This document shows positions 47,207 to 63,253 of a stretch of DNA of 64,000 nt, piece by piece. This DNA comes from Chlorokybus atmophyticus (taxonomy: Eukaryota > Plantae > Mesostigma and Chlorokybus algae): NCBI GenBank assembly GCA_009103225.1, contig RHPI01003009.1, positions 296,234 through 360,233 of the forward strand, given 5' to 3'. The translations under genes were made by a program, and so were the position numbers. The stretch's first letter is position 1, and the number at the start of each line of letters is the position of its first letter. Below the pieces are notes generated by a model. It had not been told where the DNA came from and did not search any database. It was given only the letters and a program-made list of their open reading frames with translations.

Positions 47207-49644
47207 CTACCTTCTGTTCAGCACTGCTATGGTTTCCACATGCGGGGTATGAGGAAACATATCTATCGCACGGAGGCTTGCCAGCTTGTAGTTGCCTTCG
47301 GTGCTACCATCCTGATGCAAGCCAACATAGTACAACTCAGCAGACAAGCACAAGTCGACCCTGTGCTCAACAACAAGCACCAACAAAGAAGACTGCATGA
47401 AATACAGCCTACCTTGTTGAGGCCACAGAGAGTGGCCACATCCCGCGCCTGCGTGGCTGGGTTACACGACACGTACACAATCCTGTGAGCACCGCACTCA
47501 GCCAAGAAGCTGAGCAGTTTTGGGGTCATGCCGGGTCGGTTGGGATCCGCGATGACAATATCCGGGACGGGGACCTCAGTGCCAATCTCCGCGGCAACCT
47601 TGGCAAGATCCGCGACACGAAACTCCGCATTGGTAATGTTGTTGCGATTGGCGTTGCGCTGCGCGTCCGCCACGGCTGAGGGAACAATCTCATACCCGTA
47701 CACGCGCGCACAACGCGACGCCATCGACAGGCCGATTGTGCCCGTACCGCAGAACAAGTCCAATAACACTTCCCCGCCTTTGAGCTCGCATGCTTGCTCG
47801 ACCAAAGAGTAGAGCACGTCCGCTTGAACCGTGTTGGTTTGGAAGAAAGAGTTGGCCGACACTTCGAAGCGCAAACCCCTCAACGTCTCCGTGATGTAAG
47901 CGCTGCCGTGCTCGACGAACTCCTCCTCGCCCATGGCCACACCCGAGAGGGTAGACGTAGTGTTGTTGACGATGCTCGTGACGGTGGGGAAGCGTGTGGC
48001 AATCCCCTTAGCGAGGGCGCCGACGGCTGGGGCGTCGCGGTACGCTGTAACGATGTTGACCATGTGTTGCGGGGCGTTGTTGTTGCGGGCGTCGCTGCCT
48101 CGCCTAATCATGAGGTGGCGGAGGAACCCCGTGTGCTCGCGGGCGTCGTATGCAGGGTAGCGTGCGGGCTGCGAGCGCGTGTACTCTTCCACAAAGCTGA
48201 ATATCCCGTTGGCCACATCATCCTGCAGCAAACACCTGGTACATGTGTGTATGCGCATGACATACATCTACACCATACTCACCATGTATGCGCTTACAAG
48301 GTGTCCGTGTGTACAGGCATGTGGTGATCGTGCGTGTGCAAACATTATGTCGTGTTCACACTCAACGCTTACTTGGATATTGGGAGGATGCGGTCAAACC
48401 TCCCCGGCGCATGCAAACCCAACGCAAACCCGCGCTCTGACGTCCCGCTCCCGCCCTCTTCTTTGCTCCGCTTGGGCGGTGGCTTCTCCGTCCATGCGGA
48501 GGTCCCGAAAGAAAACTCCATCTTGTTGCGGTAGGCGTATATCCTCTCCCCGCAGCCAACTGTCGGGAGCATGACATCCTTGATGATGTTGGCATCAAAC
48601 CCGCCCATGCGCGTGAAGAGGTCCCTAACTTGCGTCTCCTTGTGGGCGAGCTGCGCAGCGTAAGCAAGGTTCTGCAGGCGGCAGCCCCCGCAGGGACCAA
48701 AGTGCGGGCACGGCGGGTCCACAATGTCAGCGTGAGGAGTGAGGCTTTGCAGCTTGTAAGCCTCTGCGTGCGAGGAAGAGCGCTTGAGTATTCGTGCGAT
48801 TAGACGCTCCCCCGGCAATGCCCTCTCGCACAGCACCACCATCCCACTGTCGCCGCTGCCGTTGTCGCCCATGTCCGCGGGAATGCGGCAGACACCCTGA
48901 TGTACACAGGCACGCGCATAAGCGTTAGTCACTTTCCGGCAATTTGCTTAAGCAACAGCATGCAACAGTATGCAAGGAACGAGTAAGGTTGCGTGTGCTA
49001 TGCAGCTGTAGCTCTCTGTACCCTGAAGTTATGCAGCAAGCTCGATTACCCATGAGTGTGAAGTACTAGAAGAATGTGATGGTCTACCTGTGCTGCTTTG
49101 CACATGCTTGCGCCAGCCATCACAACATGCCTAGACGAGTCCTCCACAGCACATACTGAACAGTGCAGTGCACACACCAAGCAAGCTTGTGCAGAACAAC
49201 ACGCCTCATTGGTGATTATTGCGCAGGCAGTTGTCATTGCCAATTGATAATTGTTGATTCGTTCAAGTGCAGTCAGTTTGAAAACATCCATATTGCCGCA
49301 TTGAGATTGGCATGAACAACCTTGGCTCCGTAGGCAAGTCCCTCGCAGACGAGCTCAACGTCAGCCCCCTTGCGCAGCACACGCTTAGCAACCTCGCCTC
49401 CGCCTCCTCCTCCTTCTCCTCCTCCTCGACTCCTATCCCGCTGGCTGCTGGTTTTCACACTCTCCTCATCCTGCACCACCGCCTCCGCCGCAGTAAGGCG
49501 CAGACTCCTGCTGCTGCCTGAGCGCGCACCCGCGCCAGCATTGCGTCCGCCGGCGGCGGCGGATAGCAGCCGGCGCGCCTGCACCCTCACCAGCAGCGCC
49601 CTGGACCCCAGCTGCACGCACAACCCCACCCTCGCCGCCGCCAT
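47207..49644 (-). CDS. TRAM-domain RNA (uracil-5-)-methyltransferase, TrmA/RumA(RlmD) family, probably organelle-targeted, multi-exon
   Basis: TRAM start VELVCEGLAYGAKGVC, Fe-S motif CPHFGPCGGC, YRNKMEFSFG, SANSFFQTN, LLDLFCGTGTIG (SAM binding), DPNRPG, catalytic YVSCNPATQARD, and DMFPHTPHVE. Ala/Arg-rich N-terminus from ATG 49644; stop TAG at 47207. Confidence 0.93.
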
Positions 49645-49852
49645 CCCCGCCGCCGCCACCACCGCGTCAAGGCTTTGGCCCAAACCTGCCTTGATGAGTA
49701 GGTTCGGTTCTGAATGAGGGTTTTGGGTCCTGGACCTAGCTTAATGAACCCTTGTTGAACTTTTGTAGGGACCCAAACAGGTGAGTGTCAGTGTTGCTGG
49801 CGGTGTTGTCGTCGTGGGCGGTGGTGGCTGCGGAGGAGAAAGGGGAAGAGTC

Positions 49853-51179
49853 ATGGTGGTGCAAGAGCATGTCGCTGGTGAGCATGCTGGGAAGCTGGCG
49901 ACGGTGACGCCGCCCCTGGGCGAGTCGGCCAAAGCGGTGGTGCTGTGGGCGGCGTTGTTCTACGTGGTGTACAGGGCGGCAAGCTGGGCGGGAGCGGAGA
50001 GGGTGGCGGTGTCGTCGAGGGCAGGGTTGAACAAGCTGACGGCAGCTGAGCGCAAATCTCTGCGCTACCAGGTGGCCTCGCGCGCGGCGGCGCTGGCCCA
50101 CGTGGCCGCCGCCCTGCCCCTGGCCGCCGGTGTCCTGCTGGGCGACCCCTCGCTGCGGGCCGACCGCCTGTTCGCCACGTCGCCAGCGTCATACGCGGCG
50201 CTGCAGGTGAGCGCCGGCTACTTCCTCTACGACCTCCTCCAGTGCGTCACCCATGTCAAGGAGGAGGGTGTCCCCTTTGTCATCCACGCTCTCGCCTGCT
50301 TCCTCCTCTTTGCCTATGGCGCCGCCCGTCCCTTCTGGTCAGTCAGTTGCATTTACACGGTGCTTGTTGTTTCGTTGCAGTACTGGTTGCAAGCATGCAG
50401 TGTGTGCTATGACATTCTGATTGAGTGTGGGCTGGCTGTGTTGTGTGCTTGTCATGGTGTTGATGTTGAGCTAGTCTGGCAAAGCACTAGCATGCGTTGC
50501 AAGCCTCCCATGTGTGCAACAAAGCATGATGTTGGTTTGCTGCTTTCAGTCATGCTTACGGAGCTGCTTTTGTCTTCACCTGGGAGTTCACGACGCCGTT
50601 CGTGCATGCGCGCTGGCTCATGCACACGCGCGGCGAGACCAAGTCCCGGGCATATCTATTCAACGCCATGGCCATGATGCTCGCGTTCTTCCTCGCCCGC
50701 AACGTCACTGGCCTCTTCGTACGTATGCACACAGCATGCTTGTTTATGAAGGAGTCATGTATTACAGGATGCTGATGGTTGGCCTCCTCCGTGCACACAG
50801 CTATCAGTGGACTTTTGGCGCACAGCCAATGCGGCCATGAGCACTGGAGACCCGAGAGCACCTCCCAACTTTGCCCTGATTGCTGGGTGAGCGTGCACCC
50901 GTAAGTTTGTTATGGTGTTCAGCAGCGTCACTGACACTGCTTCATGCGGTTGCAGGGTGTTCAAGGTTGCCAACATCGCGCTGAATGGGCTCAATGCTAT
51001 GTGGATGTCCAAAATGGTGCGTGTCATTTGTGCGAGCATGTGACGATGCCAGGTGCAACCCTACCACATCGCATTGGCAACTTACAGCAGTCTCGTCACA
51101 AGTTGACAGCCATTCGTGTGGTCAGGTGCGAGGAGCTATCAAGTTGGCAACGAATGCAAAGTCCAAGAAAACCTCATGA
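49853..51179 (+). CDS. TLC (TRAM/LAG1/CLN8)-domain membrane protein, TMEM56/TLCD4-like, multi-exon
   Basis: VSAGYFLYDLL, FVIHALAC, WEFTTPFVHARW and AFFLARNV are TLC-domain motifs; several hydrophobic helices. Ends KSKKTS* at 51179. Confidence 0.85.
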
Positions 51180-54774: not shown

Positions 54775-56974
54775 CCCGTCCGCCAACAACAACGCTGCGG
54801 CGGCGGCGGCGGCGGCGACGCGTGTGCGACAATGCTTACAACCGGTCGCGTCGCTCGGTTATAGGGTTGGTCTTACACAACCTGCGTGTGGCATAAGCGA
54901 CAGTTCTCTACTCTTGACGGGTTTATGATCGAGTACAATTGATCACAGATTTACTGAGTGGCCCACACCGTGATGTCAGTGACATGACGGTATCGATGGT
55001 ACCGTATCATGTTGCGCCATGTCAATCAGTACCACAATTGACAGCACCAAGTGCAATAACAGTTAAACGTCTCGCGTCACGTAATTCCTTTATGAGTATG
55101 AATAAAAGATACTTGAACATAAATGTAACAATCAGCCTCTTATAGTTGATATCATGAGTTATTGAAAAGGGAAGTGACATTGGTTGCAACGCATTTTGTT
55201 TTTTTACATGCCTTCTTGATTCATCCGTACGTTCAAATTCCACAACGTGCAGTCGTGTGATTGTGGGTGTCATGTGTATTGTATTTTGTGCATCCGTAAC
55301 ACAATATCTTCCACATATGCAAATAGTTACGTATCTACTTACACATGTAATGTATGATATTGTGTAATACGGATACTACGGGGATTCCTGCCCCCTATTC
55401 GTTGCGTTGTATAACATGAAACAAGGCTAACTTTATTACTCAATGTCGTTCAAGTCATGGGTCGCAGCAATAGCATAGTCATATTACCACACATATTACC
55501 GGGTGAATGAGAGGGGTGGGGATTCTTGATGGGAAGGGGCCGCGAGCAAATTCAAACTTAACCCTTTATAATAGTATGCAAATACAATGAAAGACCGCGA
55601 GGCAATCAAGTACGATTATTAGATACACAACAGCATACCCCTTTCGTACAACCACACAGCAACATGGGTAGAGTAGAGGTTAAGTGATGGTGAGTGCAGT
55701 GATGGATAAACTTGTGAGGATTGGAAGCAAGGCACATCACAGAGCAAGACACAGCAGTAACGGCAGTGTGTTGGCCCCTCAGCAGCAGGTGTACAAAAGA
55801 TGCATACATTATGATGATACGAGACCGGTACAACCAATAGTGCTATACTAATGTGGGCAACCACGTTTAGCAGAACATACAAACGCTGCATCGTAAATCT
55901 CACGCAGCGTCACAGCATGTCAAGCTCCCTGCCAAGCCAATCACGTCATCCAACAACATCACAATACCACAGCCGCCCAGCAGCGCCTAAGGGCAGCAAT
56001 TAAAGCCAATGTGGCGTCTGCCTCCATCTTAGTAAAGTCTCAAAAAACATGGGAGCAAATGCGGCAAATACGTGGTTGAAGAAATTTATCTTTGGGCTTC
56101 GCCATATTTGACATGGATTTGAGAGTGCATACATCAAGATGCAAATGTCATAACTATGGCAGCAGCAAATACAAACTATGCACTATGCACGCAACATGCA
56201 ATCATCAATGCACAGCACGAGCCCTATGATTGTAATGGTACGGCTGACACTTTAGCAAGGTCGACTCAAACTATCACCTAACACCTATAAGTGCAAATTA
56301 TGTTACACACACGACACAGACTACCACCGCGATCAAGGCGGCAGTGCATGCGTGCTGACGTCATGCATGCATGTTGTGGGGGACCTAACTTGAAATTGCG
56401 TAACCGGCAGCGATGCACTGAGACGGGCGGAGAGAGTGGCGGCGACATGGGAGAGGAGGGCGGGCAGTCCTGCAGTCTGCTGTTGCTGTGGTGGAGGCTG
56501 GCCGCTAACCACAACCGTGGTGCAGTTGAATACAATTCTGCGTGCTGACTGCATAGTTCACGGGCAAGGCTAGAGTTGGCGTAGCATACAAAGTACTAGC
56601 CCGGTGGTGAAGCAAATGTGTTTAACCATGAGCGTGATGCATGTCACTTACATGTCTCGGCTCAGGTTGCCAGCAGCACACCATGCATGTTGGCATAGCA
56701 GCACACCCCTTTCGTACAACCATTGTCCAGTGTTGACCTTCATTCGCAGTTTACAAAGGCTATGTAACAATACAGCATGCCACCACAGTGCAACAACCAC
56801 CACAAGGTGTGCAATATAAGAATCAGCGGATGAATGCTTGCCTGCAAGACCACTAACCAAAGCGCTCACAGAAATCAGCAACTACAAAACTGATACTACC
56901 AACTACTAGCTATGATAGGCGGATGTACAAGGGGTGCTAACTATAGAGCAACTAGTACAACACTAATACAACAT

Positions 56975-59900
56975 TCACTCCAGCGACAATGGAAGCTCTA
57001 ACTCAACAGGTGGCAGCAAAGCAGGCTCCTTCCTGAGCAAGGTAGCTGTAGTGGACAACGCGGGACGGGTGGCAAGTAGTGCCTTCAACCTCACTGCGGC
57101 TTCCAACGCAGAAAGCCTTCCATCAACCCTAATGAGAAGGCCAGGACGGCCGAGTGGCGCATTTAACGTGAGCTTTAGCCTTTCTTGTCTGGCATCATGC
57201 TGCTCGCCGGTAAAAACATCCTGCCAGAGGTCTCCCTTCGGCAGGTAAATGGCAACTTGCGAGATGCCCTCGGCCATGACGGGCGCAACCATGAAGTCAG
57301 ACCCCAACATGAATTGAGCTCGGAGCTCATACACGCAAGGGTCCTCCGGGTAATGCAGCCACGGGTGTCGCACGAGCGGTGCGCCTCGCGTGGTGGCCTC
57401 GAACATCAGCTCTCTGCGATACTCATTGAGAGCGATGTGAACGTCTGTGTACAACGCAAACTGGCTGAGCGTCTCGTCGTCGCTGTACACCTGCACGCTC
57501 TTGTGCGGAAGAATGCCCTGATGCGTGCGGAAGACTGCATCGGTAAAGGCCGACAGCTCCATCCAACGGTACAGAAGCTCCTTGGTGCGCAGGTAGCGGA
57601 TGCGGAACCTGTCCGTCATGGTGTAACCTCCAACATCAGAGTGCGAGAGCGCAAAGCCAGACACACCACCAGATAGCATGCCCGTGAGAGCTGACATGAT
57701 GCCGTCGTGCTCGTCCCATGACACCAGCTGGTCACCCATCCAGAAGAGAGGGCTGTGGGACGGGCTTCGCGTTGAGCCCGATCGGCTGAAGAACACAACT
57801 TGCCCTTCCAAGCCAGCATCCCGCACTGCCTGTCTGTTAATTTTGGCCCAGTCTTCGGGATACCTGTTGTGAACCACTGTGGCTGACTCACCAGAGTGCA
57901 ACACCGCATCAAAGGGCAAATGCTCGCCGAAATCTGCCATCCAACCCGCAACATTGACGGTCTTGTTGTTTGGGCAGATGGTGGGCATCAACACATTCTC
58001 CTTAATCAGCTCCACAACCCATGCCCGGCAGGCTGGGTTGGTCAGGTCCAGCATGCCAAAGTGGAAGTCTGGCGTGCCACTCATGAGCATGTATGCTTGG
58101 CGCTGGACGTTCTGAACGAGGTAACCCCTAGAGCGTGCTTCGCGGAAGAGGTTGCGCCTGTGGTCACCTTTGAGCGCAACATCCACAAGGTATGGGTTCA
58201 TGTAGGTCATGAGCTTGACACCATCAGCGTCCAGGTCGCACATCATCTGCTTCCAACGGGGATAATGAGCCTCATCCAGCTCCCAGTTCCACCACAGGCG
58301 CTGACCAATCTCCGTCTTCCTGATGCCAGTCCAGTCTTGCAGCCACAGGGCTGAGATGCGAACGCCGGCAGCTTTGAGGACATTGTACGTGCGCAGAACA
58401 TCATCGGTGCCGCCTTGAAGCCCCACGATCGCACCCTCACCAGACGCCCAGCTGGGCAACGCCTGCATGCGACCAGTGTAGTCGGTGTACTCCTTGATCA
58501 AGTCCAGAGGCGTCTCTCCATGCACAATGCGCCCGCGTAACCGATGGCCAGTCACGTACGCCTCAATTGCAACACGTGTTGGGCGGCGAAAGTTGAACAC
58601 CGTGTACTGATAGCCCTCCAGGAACAGCGAACGCCGCAGGGAGGACACATAGTGTGGCACAGCTGTGTATGTTGTTTGCCAGCCGCCGGCAGCACCATCC
58701 TTCAGAAGGTTTAACACGAAAGTGTACGGTTGCAAACCCCTGCCAATGCCCTGCTCGCACGACAACACAGGCACTCGAAGCCCCTTCAGGTTAAAATACG
58801 AGAACTGCTCGCCCAAGCCGAAGAACTGCTCCTCTTTTGAACTTGCATATGTAAGCACAATATGGTTCACAGCGTGCAAACTGCTGGGGCTGGACCATTC
58901 TACTTCAAAAGCCAACTGCAGGCAAGCACGTAGCAAGAATCAGCATTGTTGAACTGCATGCACATCACCATAAGCCCAAGCCTCTTGTGAATACGTGCAG
59001 CATCTGAAGATAGAGAGGCATGCGCCTTGCCTACCTGATTCTCAGCAACTGCAGACAATGTGAAGCTGTAGTTGGTTGGCGTGGTGTCCAACCACAAAAG
59101 GCCTTGCAACTGCAGATGTGTGTCATTGTATGCAGATATCCTGTCCACACTTTGGTAGAGGGTCCTGCAAACATTACCACAGCTCAGCTCATGGTACACA
59201 TCTGCAATGCTGCATGCATGATGCCTCATGCACTCTGCACTTGTTTCAGCTACTATGACAATTAATGCACCAATTGGCGACATTCATCCATAACCACCCC
59301 ACTGCTTGATGTGACGTGTATGCAGCCTAGACCAAAGCATTTGCTGTACAAGGCCATGCAGGGCCACAACAGCGACCCACCTTCCTTCCCAACGGTCTTT
59401 TATGTGAAAATTGGCATCCTTGTTCCGCACTTGCATGATCCCGCCAGCAACCGATATAAACGCCCGTCCAGGTATACTGGACCACAGTGGCCTGGACAAG
59501 TTCCGCTGGTGCAAAACTGTTGATGAACCACAGCTTAATACATAATATCCCCTGCAACAGCACTGCAACAGATGACATGCACGTCTTGCAAGCACAGTCT
59601 TACCTTGAAGGGTGGCTCCATTCCAATCAACGGTAAATGCACCTAGATTGTGCGTGAAGTTGGCGAGGTATGAAGAGGAGATGCGCCCGTTTATGCGTGC
59701 GTCAACAGAAGTAGCCCAGTCGGGCCCAAGCCAAAGCGCAGCAGCCAACGGTAGCACAAGCAGAGCCCGCCAAAACACACGCCTCGCAAGGGACGTCCCT
59801 GCAAGAACGTCCTGCTTGCTTAACGCCTCCATACCTGTCAACAAAGGTCAATCAACCAGCTGTTTTTCGCATATGAAACCACGACAGCGCAAGCCTTCCG

Positions 59901-60054
59901 CATTGTTCGCAATCGTGGGCGTAAAAGCATAATTGAGAAGCACAACTGCAGGTTGAGCAACCTGAGCGGCCTCTGGTTCAGATGATGACAATGACGCAGG
60001 CAATACGCTCCTACATAGACTCACATTGGGCTTAGCTGCCCTGAAAAACAGCAT
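56975..60054 (-). CDS. GH31 glycosidase, YihQ/sulfoquinovosidase subfamily, with N-terminal extension and a hydrophobic helix; last exon ~56975-58918
   Basis: FFGLGEQFS, EQGIGRG, GLQGG, QDWTGIRKTEIGQRLWWNW, YMNPY, LDLTNP, nucleophile GWMADFGE, acid/base WMGDQ, HSDVGGY, FRTHQG. Four upstream exons splice in phase from ATG 60054. Confidence 0.92.
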
Positions 60055-60814
60055 TGAACCGCAAGCCACAACGCCCTCTGCAAGCTCACGGTGTAAACTT
60101 TGCCAGACACTGCGTGCACTATAAATAGCGCTAGACAAGAGCGCAAATTGGCTAGCCCGAGCAGAACTGCGTGATCAGCGCGAGTAAACACCTTGATACC
60201 CACCAGCAACACAATATGGGACAAGAGTTGCCGCAAATTAGCGCTGGTTGGCCAAGATTCCACCAGAATTGGCCAACTGGGCTGCTTGCAAGCTAGTCCA
60301 ACCTTGTGCGAGCATGGCTTGCCGCTTACGGCGCTCTCCCTCAACGCCTCTCCACTCCAACCAAGCCTCTCCCAGGCCAACTCCCGCAATGCGACCGTGT
60401 GGGCATACGCCCCCTCTCCCCCAAGGCCACCACGCCGCCTCCTAGCCGTGCCAAGTCAGGAAGCACACCAAGCAACACTTTTGCCTTGCCTCTGGCCAGG
60501 GCAGGACAAAAGATTGTGCAAAGCGACCCGCTCTTTTCTAACCTTGCTTCAACAGCTAGCCCGACCGAACCCCCACGCCCCCAGGCGGCGACGGAGGACG
60601 ACGACGAGGTGGCCGCCGCAGCGTTCTACTATAGGCCGGGCAAGGCTGCTGACGTACGTAATTGCGCAAAACTGAGCGGCCTGTCCACGGTGGACGTTCC
60701 ACGTTGGAAAGCCGCCGAACGAACGACAACAGGCATAACGTTCCTCTCGTCCAGAAGATGTGCCGTATTTGGCTCACCCGCGCTGAGCTATAGAACTCAT
60801 ACTACGGAGACGAC

Positions 60815-60965: not shown

Positions 60966-63253
60966 AATGCAGGCCTCTGAACGAGCGTGTCAGAGGTTGA
61001 TGGGTGTTGGGCAGGTCGCAATTAGTCATTGACTCAGTGAGCACTTTATGCGGAGCATGGTGAGCCACAAAGTTTGGCAATTGGCGGCTTGCGATTGACG
61101 CGTACACAGACTCCGCAATAGCAAAGCCGCACAACTGAATGCATGATGTTCGCAAATTATTCTGCAGCTTGACAAGAGAGCTGCAACTGGCAGGCTGCAG
61201 CACTGTACGTGTGCATGGGATGGGTAAGAAAAGTACTACATTGCACCCAATAAAAGCGTGTATAAATGATGCAATGAAGTTAGCACATTATTGACGCCTA
61301 TGCAAGCAGCTGTTCATCATCAATTCTCATATGTACGTATCATGCAGTGTTCATGCACATCACATTCGAATCATGTAACACCGTTCATACAAATTGTACA
61401 ATTCTGCACCCGGTATGCATGTTGAATCTTAGGAGTAATAACTTAACATACGGATGCACGCAATTCTTTTATACGCAAAAATAATTTAAAAATAATGGTA
61501 TAATAACCATTATATAATAATAAATTAAAAAATACTATATTACACGAAACGGTCATCGATGATCATGGCATCATGATTGCCATTTATATAACGCATTTAC
61601 AATCTGATGTGACATTGTGTATATTGAGGTGTGGTTAATAAAGATACGGGGGCATTTTATAAGTATAACAAACGTTTTCATGAACTTGATACATACAACT
61701 TCAACGCAGTTCAACGGCTATCAATCAATTCAAAATGTATGAAATTCTCTTGTTACACCGCCATGCATCCTGCTTTATGATTTTTATTGATTTGTACAAT
61801 ATACATTTACATGTATTTATGATAATAATTTATGTTTGCGAGGATGCAGCATGTTAAATGTTTAAATGTTTCTCGCTTCGCATAAGGTGGCAATTACCGT
61901 AATCACGACATCACACATAACAATTATTGACAATTTTATAATCATCACTGAGGGGTGAGAGTACAAGCATTGCTTTATTTCCATTAATTGATTAAAACAA
62001 ATCAATAGAGCAAGTAAGAAAGAGGTGCATTCTTATTGATTGGTAAAAATAGTTAATATAATATCACACGATCACACCATGTGTATGGAAGCAAACCCAA
62101 CATGTTCAATGGCATGCTTAACGTCGCCATCGAAAGCAATTGATGGCAAGGTTACATGTTGCATCGCAATAGCACTACAACCCGCCACATTACATAAGCT
62201 GCAAGGATTTTGTAAGAAAAACGGGTAGCTCATTGCACAATTGCAACTCATGGCAAGTGGGCAAGGTACATTGCTAAGTGGTGTTGGTATAAGCCAACCC
62301 TAACAGTGGTGCCTCCCTTCTTGACGGTTTTGGTCTGCGCACGAACCTGCATAAAGATGACCATACGCATGTTCCTTAAAGCATATCATTAGCGAAACCA
62401 CGCGCATATCGCACGAGAACATCACATCTGGCTGACATATACAACGATATATAAAAGCAATGCTGTACAATCCTCTGCAGCCAGGCAGCAGCAAATTTTG
62501 GCTATGGCCCATATACATCAGCATTCTATTTGCACATGGCTTTTCGTGCTTACTACGTGGTTTGTCGCCACCTGATTGACCGTGTCAATGCAACAACAAC
62601 TGTGCAACAGTTCCATCACAACCAGGACAACGCACAGCGCTTTCACTTTGTACATCTTTCGATACTTTAGACACGAGCATCGCTGCAGGTGACTGGTTGC
62701 AGCTCTGAAAAGTCCTAAGGAAAGCGGTCGGCATTGATCTGTGCCCGCTTGCCGTGTGTCTGAAGCGCGGCTGCATTGTAGGCCAATGCAGCAACACGTT
62801 CCTGCTGATTGTAGCCCAAGAACGTGAGGCAGAGTCTGTCAGGACACTCGTTGCGACTGGCCAAGAGGTTGGACAGCTCACCGGTACTTTCGGCGTTGAT
62901 AGTTTCGTATTTGTGCAAACCACACTTCCATCTCTGAATCCCCAGTGCACCCCTTTGTACTTGGAAATGCGTGCTGGTACTGCAGCATCGCACAGTTAGC
63001 TGAAGCAGACTCAATTACATGAACGACTGCACACATGAACTCACATTCTGGCAGGTGTTGCTCTTGGCTGTCGGTGTGCTTATCGCTGCCAGGCTTATCA
63101 CGCCGCCTTGACAGTGAGGAAAAGCGATTGCGCATTGGCTTTGTTGATGGCTCTTGCTTGCTTTGACTGCATGGCAAGCAGTGTGTATAGTTGCTCAGCA
63201 CACAAAACCGGTTGCTGGATATATGACTTGTCCACTTACCACACGTCGGGCGT

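What the first reader, a model, noticed from the sequence alone, without database searches (positions are those of the whole stretch)
56975..60054. Algal GH31 with the complete sulfoquinovosidase motif, a possible targeting peptide and a membrane anchor
Seen: GLQGG, Q-D-W-x10-R-x2-W (QDWTGIRKTEIGQRLWW), HSDVGGY and RTHQG, plus both catalytic Asp motifs. Established knowledge, recalled rather than aligned: E. coli YihQ sulfoquinovosidase binds the sulfonate through the QQRWY set (Q262/Q288/R301/W304/Y508) plus H537, and the Q to R to W spacing here (+13, +16) is the same. The N-terminus (MLFFRAAKPNVSLCRSVLPASLSSS...) looks like a transit peptide and is followed by a hydrophobic helix (RRVFWRALLVLPLAAALWLGP). 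Inference: a membrane-anchored enzyme that could cleave the thylakoid sulfolipid SQDG or its products. SQDG breakdown under sulfur starvation is known in green algae, but to my knowledge the enzyme is not established. Plant homologues of YihQ exist, so the family is not new; the function and location would be.
Basis: partly seen in the sequence, partly recalled or inferred. Interest (0 to 1): 0.75.

Follow-up and report, generated by a model that had tools for sequence, protein, structure and literature searches.

The report
Green-algal sulfoquinovosidase with secretory-type anchor
This is an expressed, five-exon Chlorokybus atmophyticus gene for a YihQ-type enzyme that should cut the sulfosugar off the plant sulfolipid, but the supposed chloroplast transit peptide lies in an intron and the true N-terminus looks like a secretory signal or anchor, so it is a good but not new kind of candidate.

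Summary
The motif observation is confirmed. The minus-strand gene is JGI model Chlat1 6842 of Chlorokybus atmophyticus (816 aa). It passes NCBI's YihQ equivalog model and matches E. coli YihQ at E 2e-118. Its fold matches all four solved sulfoquinovosidases (TM 0.90-0.95). It carries every YihQ pocket residue: Q337, Q363, R376, W379, D498, D565, Y601, H635.

Spliced transcript contigs from two studies define five exons. The real N-terminus has 21 residues, then Arg-Arg and one hydrophobic helix. Ninety-five of 120 bacterial relatives have a helix at the same place. An unidentified, probably green-algal transcript that shares two private indels has a classical signal peptide there. This points to the secretory pathway, vacuole or cell surface, not to a thylakoid anchor.

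One new point emerged. The sulfonate-binding arginine is Gln in 121 of 128 nearest relatives and in 120 of 120 angiosperm homologues, many of them named "sulfoquinovosidase". Chlorokybus keeps Arg. Monophyly with the land-plant proteins is not rejected, so there is no sign of recent gene transfer.

GH31 sulfoquinovosidase homologues in algae are already published, and activity here is untested. The scan also flagged a second candidate (s1-194441) elsewhere in this genome.

The parts
56725..60605 (-). Whole transcribed unit (about 2.99 kb mRNA after splicing); ends extrapolated from the X1 contig
   Evidence: table 8: the X1 contig of 2991 letters lies on 56800-60450 with 75 letters beyond one end and 155 beyond the other.
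60303..60605 (-). Exon 1: 5' UTR plus the first 13 coding bases (ATG at 60315-60313, MLAQ + first base of Gly5)
   Evidence: Joints; this ATG is the first in-frame ATG after an in-frame stop.
60341..60406 (-). Upstream ORF of 21 codons in the 5' UTR, out of frame with the main ORF
59835..60302 (-). Intron 1 (468 nt, GT..AG).
   Evidence: skipped in X1, X2 and X3, with zero depth over 59850-60093; splice sites; the ORF 59848..60138 ends in a stop.
59604..59834 (-). Exon 2: N-terminal tail, hydrophobic helix, start of the N-terminal beta-sandwich domain
59722..59784 (-). Residues 22-42 (RRVFWRALLVLPLAAALWLGP): signal-anchor or signal-peptide core
   Evidence: this is the only 19-residue window with Kyte-Doolittle mean of 1.6 or more (1.65, residues 24-42); helix 19-53 in the AlphaFold model.
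59381..59516 (-). Exon 3 (N-terminal domain)
   Evidence: aligns to the N-domain of bacterial relatives.
59035..59164 (-). Exon 4 (N-terminal domain)
56975..58915 (-). Coding part of exon 5: end of the N-domain, GH31 TIM barrel, C-terminal beta-sandwich, disordered tail, stop TGA 56975-56977
   Evidence: PF01055 at 5e-33 and PF21365 at 4e-17. Also.
58289..58417 (-). Sugar and sulfonate recognition residues Q337 (58415-58417), Q363 (58337-58339), R376 (58298-58300, codon CGC), W379 (58289-58291)
57521..57934 (-). Catalytic nucleophile D498 (57932-57934), acid/base D565 (57731-57733), Y601 (57623-57625), H635 (57521-57523)

Best explanation
This is a nuclear, intron-containing, expressed gene of the streptophyte alga Chlorokybus atmophyticus. 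It encodes an 816-aa retaining alpha-glycosidase of the GH31_13 (YihQ) sulfoquinovosidase type. The catalytic domain most likely hydrolyses alpha-sulfoquinovosyl glycerol, and possibly intact or lyso-SQDG, to free sulfoquinovose. D498 would act as nucleophile and D565 as acid/base. R376, W379 and Y601 would hold the 6-sulfonate, and Q363 with Q337 the 4-OH. The protein starts with a short tail, an Arg-Arg pair and one hydrophobic helix. This would insert it into the ER membrane as a signal anchor (N-terminus in the cytosol) or act as a cleavable signal peptide. The enzyme would then work on the extracytosolic side, in a vacuole or lytic compartment, at the cell surface, or secreted. It would act on sulfolipid headgroups delivered by membrane turnover or scavenged from outside. 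Shown here: gene structure, expression, family, residues and fold. Inferred: substrate, topology and compartment.
For: Gene model. Spliced contigs from two studies give five exons with GT..AG introns. The joined exons translate exactly to database protein P0001, which is EukProt Chlorokybus_atmophyticus P006490 / JGI Chlat1 6842.

Family. PRK10426 scores 681.8 bits against a cut-off of 553. YihQ matches at E 2e-118, followed by the other solved sulfoquinovosidases (SQases). The AlphaFold model has pLDDT 88 and pTM 0.88. Its 23 best PDB matches are all SQases (B. megaterium, E. rectale, E. coli, A. tumefaciens) with TM 0.90-0.95 at E about 1e-70. The next fold scores 1e-44.

Residues. All eight YihQ residues are identical. 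The Q/E-RWY motif is the published signature of this subfamily (PMC12780224).

Constraint. Another Chlorokybus strain (X2) shows 13 synonymous and 6 non-synonymous differences. No non-synonymous change falls before residue 726, no motif codon is hit, and there are no indels in the CDS.

N-terminus. There is a single hydrophobic window at residues 24-42. Ninety-five of 120 bacterial relatives have one at the aligned place. The nearest algal-type relative P0112 has a textbook signal peptide there and 7 N-glycosylation sequons. A preprint predicts that most animal SQases are also secretory.
Against: No enzyme of this anchored clade has been assayed. Most of its members, including all 120 angiosperm homologues, have Gln instead of the sulfonate-binding Arg, so the clade's ancestral substrate may not be a sulfoquinovoside. 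The bacterial relatives are not in recognisable sulfoglycolysis operons. The nearly invariant Glu after the conserved His (RTHEG) is Gln in Chlorokybus. No signal-peptide or targeting predictor was available here. The helix core after R27 has only about 14 hydrophobic residues and a borderline hydropathy of 1.65. The five sequons are not more than chance gives (p 0.22). SQDG sits in thylakoids, which are not directly reachable from the secretory pathway.
Confidence: 0.6

Rival explanations
1. One reading: a chloroplast enzyme anchored in, or translocated across, the thylakoid membrane, acting on SQDG in place. The RR-hydrophobic segment would serve as a thylakoid Tat-type transfer signal.
For: The substrate is a thylakoid lipid. 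Residues 22-28 (RRVFWRA) resemble the twin-arginine consensus RRxFLK and are followed by a hydrophobic stretch and a small-residue site (WATS).
Against: The proposed transit peptide is intronic. Only 21 residues precede the RR pair and they include Glu7 and Asp13. No in-frame upstream ATG exists. The bacterial relatives and P0112 have ordinary anchors or signal peptides without RR.
Confidence: 0.1
2. It is not a sulfoquinovosidase. It would be an alpha-glucosidase-like enzyme for another glucoside, for example a neutral or differently 6-substituted glycolipid headgroup, like the Gln-type majority of its clade. The Arg would be incidental.
For: Gln stands at the R301 position in 121 of 128 nearest relatives and in 120 of 120 angiosperms. 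No sulfoglycolysis genes lie next to the bacterial relatives. The RTHEG Glu is changed to Gln.
Against: All eight residues of the assayed enzymes are present. Every solved SQase has Arg at this position. Arg is kept in both members of the algal pair, which are only 44% identical overall. The fold matches SQases far better than any other GH31.
Confidence: 0.2
3. A bacterial contaminant, or a recent horizontal transfer from bacteria into Chlorokybus.
For: The 119 best non-self hits are bacterial or metagenomic at 48-53% identity, against 46% to barley. The N-domain also finds only bacteria.
Against: The gene has four GT..AG introns and spliced transcripts. Its neighbours have eukaryote-type domains. 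The tree that holds Chlorokybus, P0112 and 10 angiosperms together has a log-likelihood 7.4 higher than the free search, with p-AU 0.65. Two indels are shared only with the eukaryote-like transcript P0112.
Confidence: 0.05

Closest known systems
E. coli YihQ and the other assayed GH31_13 sulfoquinovosidases (A. tumefaciens SQase, E. rectale, B. megaterium; PDB 5aed, 5ohs, 6pnr, 8r56)
   Same: The N-domain, TIM barrel and C-domain fold is the same (TM 0.90-0.95). Both catalytic Asp residues, Q262, Q288, R301, W304, Y508 and H537 are identical. It scores above the NCBIfam equivalog cut-off.
   Different: Identity is only 30-35%. About 60 extra N-terminal residues carry a hydrophobic helix, whereas the assayed enzymes are soluble and cytoplasmic. 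There is a 9-residue insertion with a Cys and an N-glycosylation sequon before the nucleophile motif, and a 1-residue insertion before RTHQG. A 37-residue C-terminal tail is present, of which the last 23 residues (794-816) have very low model confidence and are probably disordered. There are no neighbouring sulfoglycolysis genes.
Membrane-anchored bacterial GH31 proteins of 740-770 aa (Chloroflexota, Rubrobacteraceae, Thermodesulfobacteriota and others; uncharacterised, some named sulfoquinovosidase by JGI)
   Same: These are the closest sequences (48-53% identity over about 90% of the length). The N-terminal hydrophobic helix sits at the aligned position, and the N-domain is the same.
   Different: Most have Gln at the R301 position. 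Only a small Rubrobacteraceae-like clade (P0003, P0004, P0005, P0007, P0017) has Arg. They lack the two algal indels.
Angiosperm 'sulfoquinovosidase / sulfoquinovosidase-like / alpha-glucosidase YihQ' proteins of about 870 aa (from memory, the HGL1 At3g23640 group)
   Same: Identity is 46% in the catalytic part. Q, Q, W, Y, H and both Asp residues are conserved. Monophyly with the Chlorokybus protein is not rejected.
   Different: All 120 examined have Gln in place of the sulfonate-binding Arg. None has an N-terminal hydrophobic segment; instead they share a conserved basic N-terminus (..KKHHK..NNPFP..). They lack the algal indels.
Animal sulfoquinovosidase homologues (bioRxiv 10.64898/2026.02.11.705467)
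   Same: They are eukaryotic GH31 homologues with the YihQ residues and predicted signal peptides, read as extracytosolic or digestive enzymes.
   Different: Where present, their membrane attachment is C-terminal (GPI or transmembrane helix), not N-terminal. The relationship to the algal gene was not tested here.

Membership tests
Glycoside hydrolase family 31 | GH31 TIM-barrel and C-terminal domains | tested here: met
   PF01055 at 5e-33 and PF21365 at 4.3e-17.
Glycoside hydrolase family 31 | Catalytic nucleophile Asp and acid/base Asp | tested here: met
   D498 and D565 align to YihQ D405 and D472.
GH31_13 sulfoquinovosidase (YihQ type) | Q/E-RWY motif: Q288 (or E), R301, W304, Y508 | tested here: met
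   Q363, R376, W379, Y601. The motif definition is from PMC12780224.
GH31_13 sulfoquinovosidase (YihQ type) | Partner residue Q262 (or Lys when position 288 is Glu) and H537 | tested here: met
   Q337 and H635.
GH31_13 sulfoquinovosidase (YihQ type) | Scores above the curated YihQ equivalog model | tested here: met
   NF007746 PRK10426 at 681.8 bits, cut-off 553. The next model (alpha-xylosidase) scores 170.6 bits against a cut-off of 606.
GH31_13 sulfoquinovosidase (YihQ type) | Fold closest to solved sulfoquinovosidases | tested here: met
   The top 23 Foldseek matches are all SQases, E 1e-69 to 1e-75; the next fold scores 4e-44.
GH31_13 sulfoquinovosidase (YihQ type) | Hydrolyses alpha-sulfoquinovosides and not alpha-glucosides | not testable with these tools
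   Needs an enzyme assay.
GH31_13 sulfoquinovosidase (YihQ type) | Genomic association with sulfoquinovose catabolic genes (bacterial criterion) | tested here: not met
   The two window neighbours with a domain match are a tRNA U5-methyltransferase-like and a TLC-domain gene. The bacterial relatives also show no such association. This criterion has little weight in a eukaryote.
Chloroplast-targeted protein (transit peptide) | N-terminal presequence present in the mature mRNA | tested here: not met
   The proposed presequence lies in intron 1. The real N-terminus has 21 residues, including Glu and Asp, before the hydrophobic helix.
Secretory signal peptide or type II signal anchor | Basic n-region followed by a single N-terminal hydrophobic core | tested here: inconclusive
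   The Kyte-Doolittle window of residues 24-42 scores 1.65, with RR before it and a helix in the model. P0112 has a classical signal peptide at the aligned place. No SignalP, TMHMM or DeepLoc was available.

The most novel reading that the evidence does not exclude
Green algae keep a true, Arg-bearing sulfoquinovosidase that works outside the cytosol, either secreted and cell-surface like the arylsulfatase of sulfur-starved Chlamydomonas, or in a lytic vacuole. Land plants would have turned the orthologue into a soluble enzyme without a signal peptide, in which the sulfonate-binding Arg is replaced by Gln. If so, the 'sulfoquinovosidase' label on angiosperm genes is probably wrong or denotes a changed specificity. 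The first step of algal sulfolipid sulfur recycling or scavenging would then take place outside the chloroplast.
Probability: 0.3. Interest if true: 0.6.

Novelty: new member of a known kind. Interest (0 to 1): 0.45.

Why it matters
[quoted passage not shown] A 2022 review states that the eukaryotic sulfoquinovose degradation enzymes remain unknown (PMC9594981). This gene is a concrete, expressed candidate with a complete motif for the first step in a basal streptophyte. First, the enzyme is probably routed through the secretory pathway, which changes where sulfolipid headgroup cleavage should be sought. Second, the land-plant proteins annotated as sulfoquinovosidase lack the defining arginine, while the algal protein and one algal-type transcript keep it. 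The family itself, and its presence in algae, are already in the literature (Speciale 2016 as cited in PMC13436972 and PMC12780224).

Tried and rejected
- Transit-peptide reading: rejected, because the ORF is intronic.
- Alternative first exon: MLFFRAAKPN followed by a GTGAGT donor is in the right phase, but no contig uses it and depth there is zero.
- Bacterial contamination or recent gene transfer: rejected on introns, transcripts, the AU test and shared indels.
- The first quick tree placed Chlorokybus and barley on separate long branches with bacteria. With 10 angiosperms and P0112 added, the result changed, so the first tree is not used.
- Sulfoglycolysis operons around five bacterial relatives: none recognisable.
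- N-glycosylation sequon enrichment: not significant.
- ESM Atlas look-ups gave only generic GH31 clusters (Mucoromycota, Streptophyta, Bacillota).
- Speciale 2016 and Abayakoon 2018 could not be read because they are not held. What is said of them comes from papers that cite them.
- The run accession of P0112 occurs in no held paper, so its organism is unknown. GC3 of 87% only suggests a chlorophyte.
- No typed joined sequence was sent to any search tool. Exons were searched by reference, and after that the database protein P0001 was used. The exons were joined only inside local scripts, once to check identity with P0001 and once to classify the X2 differences as synonymous or not.
Full report
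**Observation.** The region holds a minus-strand gene. Pfam finds the GH31 TIM barrel and the GH31 C-terminal domain. NCBI's equivalog model for YihQ (PRK10426) scores 681.8 bits against a cut-off of 553, while the next model, alpha-xylosidase, reaches 170.6 bits against 606. Against solved structures the best match is E. coli YihQ (E 2e-118), followed by the three other sulfoquinovosidases; ordinary GH31 enzymes follow at E 1e-33 or weaker.

I fetched native yihQ from E. coli K-12 and aligned it. Q262, Q288, R301, W304, D405, D472, Y508 and H537 are matched by Q337, Q363, R376, W379, D498, D565, Y601 and H635.

**Organism and gene model.** The word search returned a 100% identical 816-aa protein, JGI Chlat1 6842, which is EukProt Chlorokybus_atmophyticus P006490.
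- Public runs of the same organism hold spliced contigs. Three contigs from two studies skip four stretches, all GT..AG on the minus strand.
- The exons are 60303-60605, 59604-59834, 59381-59516, 59035-59164 and 56725-58915. The outer transcript ends are extrapolated from contig length.
- Joined in a local script, the coding parts translate exactly to the database protein.
- The start ATG (60315) is the first in-frame ATG after an in-frame stop. A 21-codon upstream ORF lies in the 5' UTR.
- In the flanks only two large ORFs gave a domain match: a tRNA U5-methyltransferase-like gene and a TLC-domain gene.

**The "transit peptide".** The ORF that starts MLFFRAAKPNV (60054 down to 59851) ends in a stop and lies wholly inside intron 1 (59835-60302). 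No contig uses it, and depth is zero over 59850-60093 in all three runs. Only one 168-letter contig of depth 3 touches another part of the intron, as expected for unspliced RNA or DNA. This part of the observation, and the inference built on it, fails.

**The real N-terminus.**
- This is the only 19-residue window in the protein with Kyte-Doolittle mean of 1.6 or more (1.65, residues 24-42).
- AlphaFold models residues 19-53 as one helix. Residues 1-18 and 794-816 have pLDDT below 50 and are probably disordered.
- The helix is not an algal invention. Ninety-five of 120 full-length bacterial relatives (740-770 aa) have a hydrophobic window in the first 90 residues, and these align with the Chlorokybus helix.
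- With basic residues before the helix, the expected topology is N-terminus in the cytosol and catalytic domain outside it. The helix would act either as a signal anchor or, after cleavage near WATS, as a signal peptide.
- I could not run a dedicated predictor, so this step is inference.
- RRVFWR resembles a twin-arginine motif. However, 21 residues that include Glu and Asp are a poor stromal targeting domain, so a thylakoid-lumen route is kept only as a minor rival.

**Relatives.** The best 119 non-self hits are bacterial or metagenomic proteins at 48-53% identity. The N-domain alone also finds bacteria. Three of them were checked on their contigs and are plainly bacterial, with no recognisable sulfoglycolysis genes beside them.

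A barley homologue is 46% identical in the catalytic part and YihQ is 35% identical. Searching with barley returned 120 angiosperm proteins, many named "sulfoquinovosidase" or "sulfoquinovosidase-like" by NCBI.

**The arginine.** At the R301 position Chlorokybus has Arg (codon CGC). By contrast, 121 of the 128 proteins from the first two searches have Gln, and so do all 120 angiosperms. The other seven residues are almost invariant in all of them.

All solved sulfoquinovosidases have Arg here, and the literature defines the subfamily by the Q/E-RWY motif (PMC12780224). None of the 120 angiosperm proteins has an N-terminal hydrophobic segment.

The Arg-bearing relatives are a small Rubrobacteraceae-like clade (P0003, P0004, P0005, P0007, P0017) and one protein, P0112.

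**P0112.**
- It comes from a 3074-nt contig of a public run with a single ORF and UTR-like flanks. GC is 65% and GC3 is 87%, so it is probably a transcript of a chlorophyte, but the organism is not known.
- It starts with a textbook signal peptide and has seven N-glycosylation sequons.
- It shares two indels with Chlorokybus that no bacterium or angiosperm in the alignment has. One is an insertion with a Cys and sequon(s) just before the GWMADFG nucleophile motif. The other is a one-residue insertion before RTH(Q/P)G.
- The two pair with SH-aLRT 100 in the tree. The shared indels make long-branch attraction an unlikely cause.

**Descent.** In the 77-row tree the algal pair, the angiosperms and a few bacterial lines form an unresolved group. 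The best tree that holds Chlorokybus, P0112 and the ten angiosperms together has a log-likelihood 7.4 higher than the free search, with p-AU 0.65. One green-plant clade is therefore compatible with the data, and a recent transfer into Chlorokybus is not needed. An older bacterial origin of the whole plant clade remains possible; a 2010 study also found bacteria to be the nearest non-plant relatives of the HGL1 group (PMC3087550). The direction of the Arg/Gln changes cannot be settled with this sampling.

**Structure and constraint.** The model (pLDDT 88.2, pTM 0.88) matches the four solved sulfoquinovosidases with TM 0.90-0.95 normalised by target length. The next fold class scores thirty orders of magnitude weaker.

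A second strain (X2) differs at 19 coding positions, 13 synonymous and 6 not. All six amino-acid changes fall at residue 726 or later, none touches a motif codon, and there are no indels in the CDS. A third contig (X3) differs at about 4% of positions in the last exon, also without coding indels.

**What it most likely does.**
- Shown: an expressed, conserved gene for a GH31_13-type enzyme with the full sulfonate pocket and an N-terminal hydrophobic helix.
- Inferred: it cleaves alpha-sulfoquinovosides.
- Inferred: its catalytic domain faces a secretory-pathway lumen, the vacuole or the outside.

Two roles fit. One is headgroup removal after thylakoid lipid reaches a lytic compartment. The other is scavenging of external sulfoquinovosyl glycerol, as arylsulfatase scavenges sulfate esters in sulfur-starved Chlamydomonas (this comparison is from my own knowledge). 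A preprint reaches a similar secretory reading for animal homologues.

**Novelty.** GH31 sulfoquinovosidase orthologues in eukaryotic algae are already reported (Speciale 2016 as cited in PMC13436972, and PMC12780224). The gene model itself is in JGI and EukProt. It is a new member of a known kind.

Three things are worth carrying forward: the corrected N-terminus and likely compartment, the contrast between Arg in the algal proteins and Gln in angiosperms, and the existence of an anchored bacterial clade. The scan has a second note on another piece of this genome, "Candidate algal sulfoquinovosidase" (s1-194441). I could not read that sequence.

Noticed in passing
P0128-P0247 (angiosperm proteins): All 120 angiosperm homologues, many named sulfoquinovosidase or sulfoquinovosidase-like in NCBI or UniRef, have Gln at the position of the sulfonate-binding Arg301 of YihQ. 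None has an N-terminal hydrophobic segment. They share a basic N-terminus ..KKHHK..NNPFP...
   Followed up: partly
L006:5307-9438 and L007:5425-9536: In both contigs carrying Arg-type bacterial relatives (P0005, P0017), the GH31 gene lies divergently next to the same three genes: sulfatase-family (PF00884), Fe-dependent alcohol dehydrogenase and aldehyde dehydrogenase. L007 also has a SulP sulfate transporter nearby. This is a possible link to sulfur metabolism.
   Followed up: no
L004:12253-13215: In the contig of Gln-type relative P0125, a 320-aa NAD-dependent epimerase-family gene overlaps the end of the GH31 gene by 4 bases, so the two probably form an operon.
   Followed up: no
window 60341-60406 (-): A 21-codon upstream ORF lies in the 5' UTR of the sulfoquinovosidase mRNA, out of frame with the main ORF.
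   Followed up: no
L005 (Logan contig of run SRR7796775): An mRNA-like contig of unknown organism (GC 65%, GC3 87%) encodes the closest algal-type relative, with Arg at the R301 position, a classical signal peptide and seven N-glycosylation sequons.
   Followed up: partly
window 47263-48267 (-) and 49781-50677 (+): The neighbouring long ORFs match a tRNA (uracil-5)-methyltransferase domain (2e-16) and a TLC (TRAM/LAG1/CLN8) domain (1e-7).
   Followed up: no
window 55000-55500 and 61500-62000: There are AT-rich dips (GC 0.38 and 0.31) on either side of the gene, against a background of about 0.55.
   Followed up: no
window 56816-60450, run X3: One transcript contig differs from the window at about 4% of positions in the last exon and has several indels in the 3' UTR. 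It is probably another Chlorokybus species or strain.
   Followed up: partly
P0001 residue 636; P0112 aligned residue: The Glu of the nearly invariant RTHEG motif, next to the substrate-binding His, is Gln in Chlorokybus and Pro in P0112.
   Followed up: no
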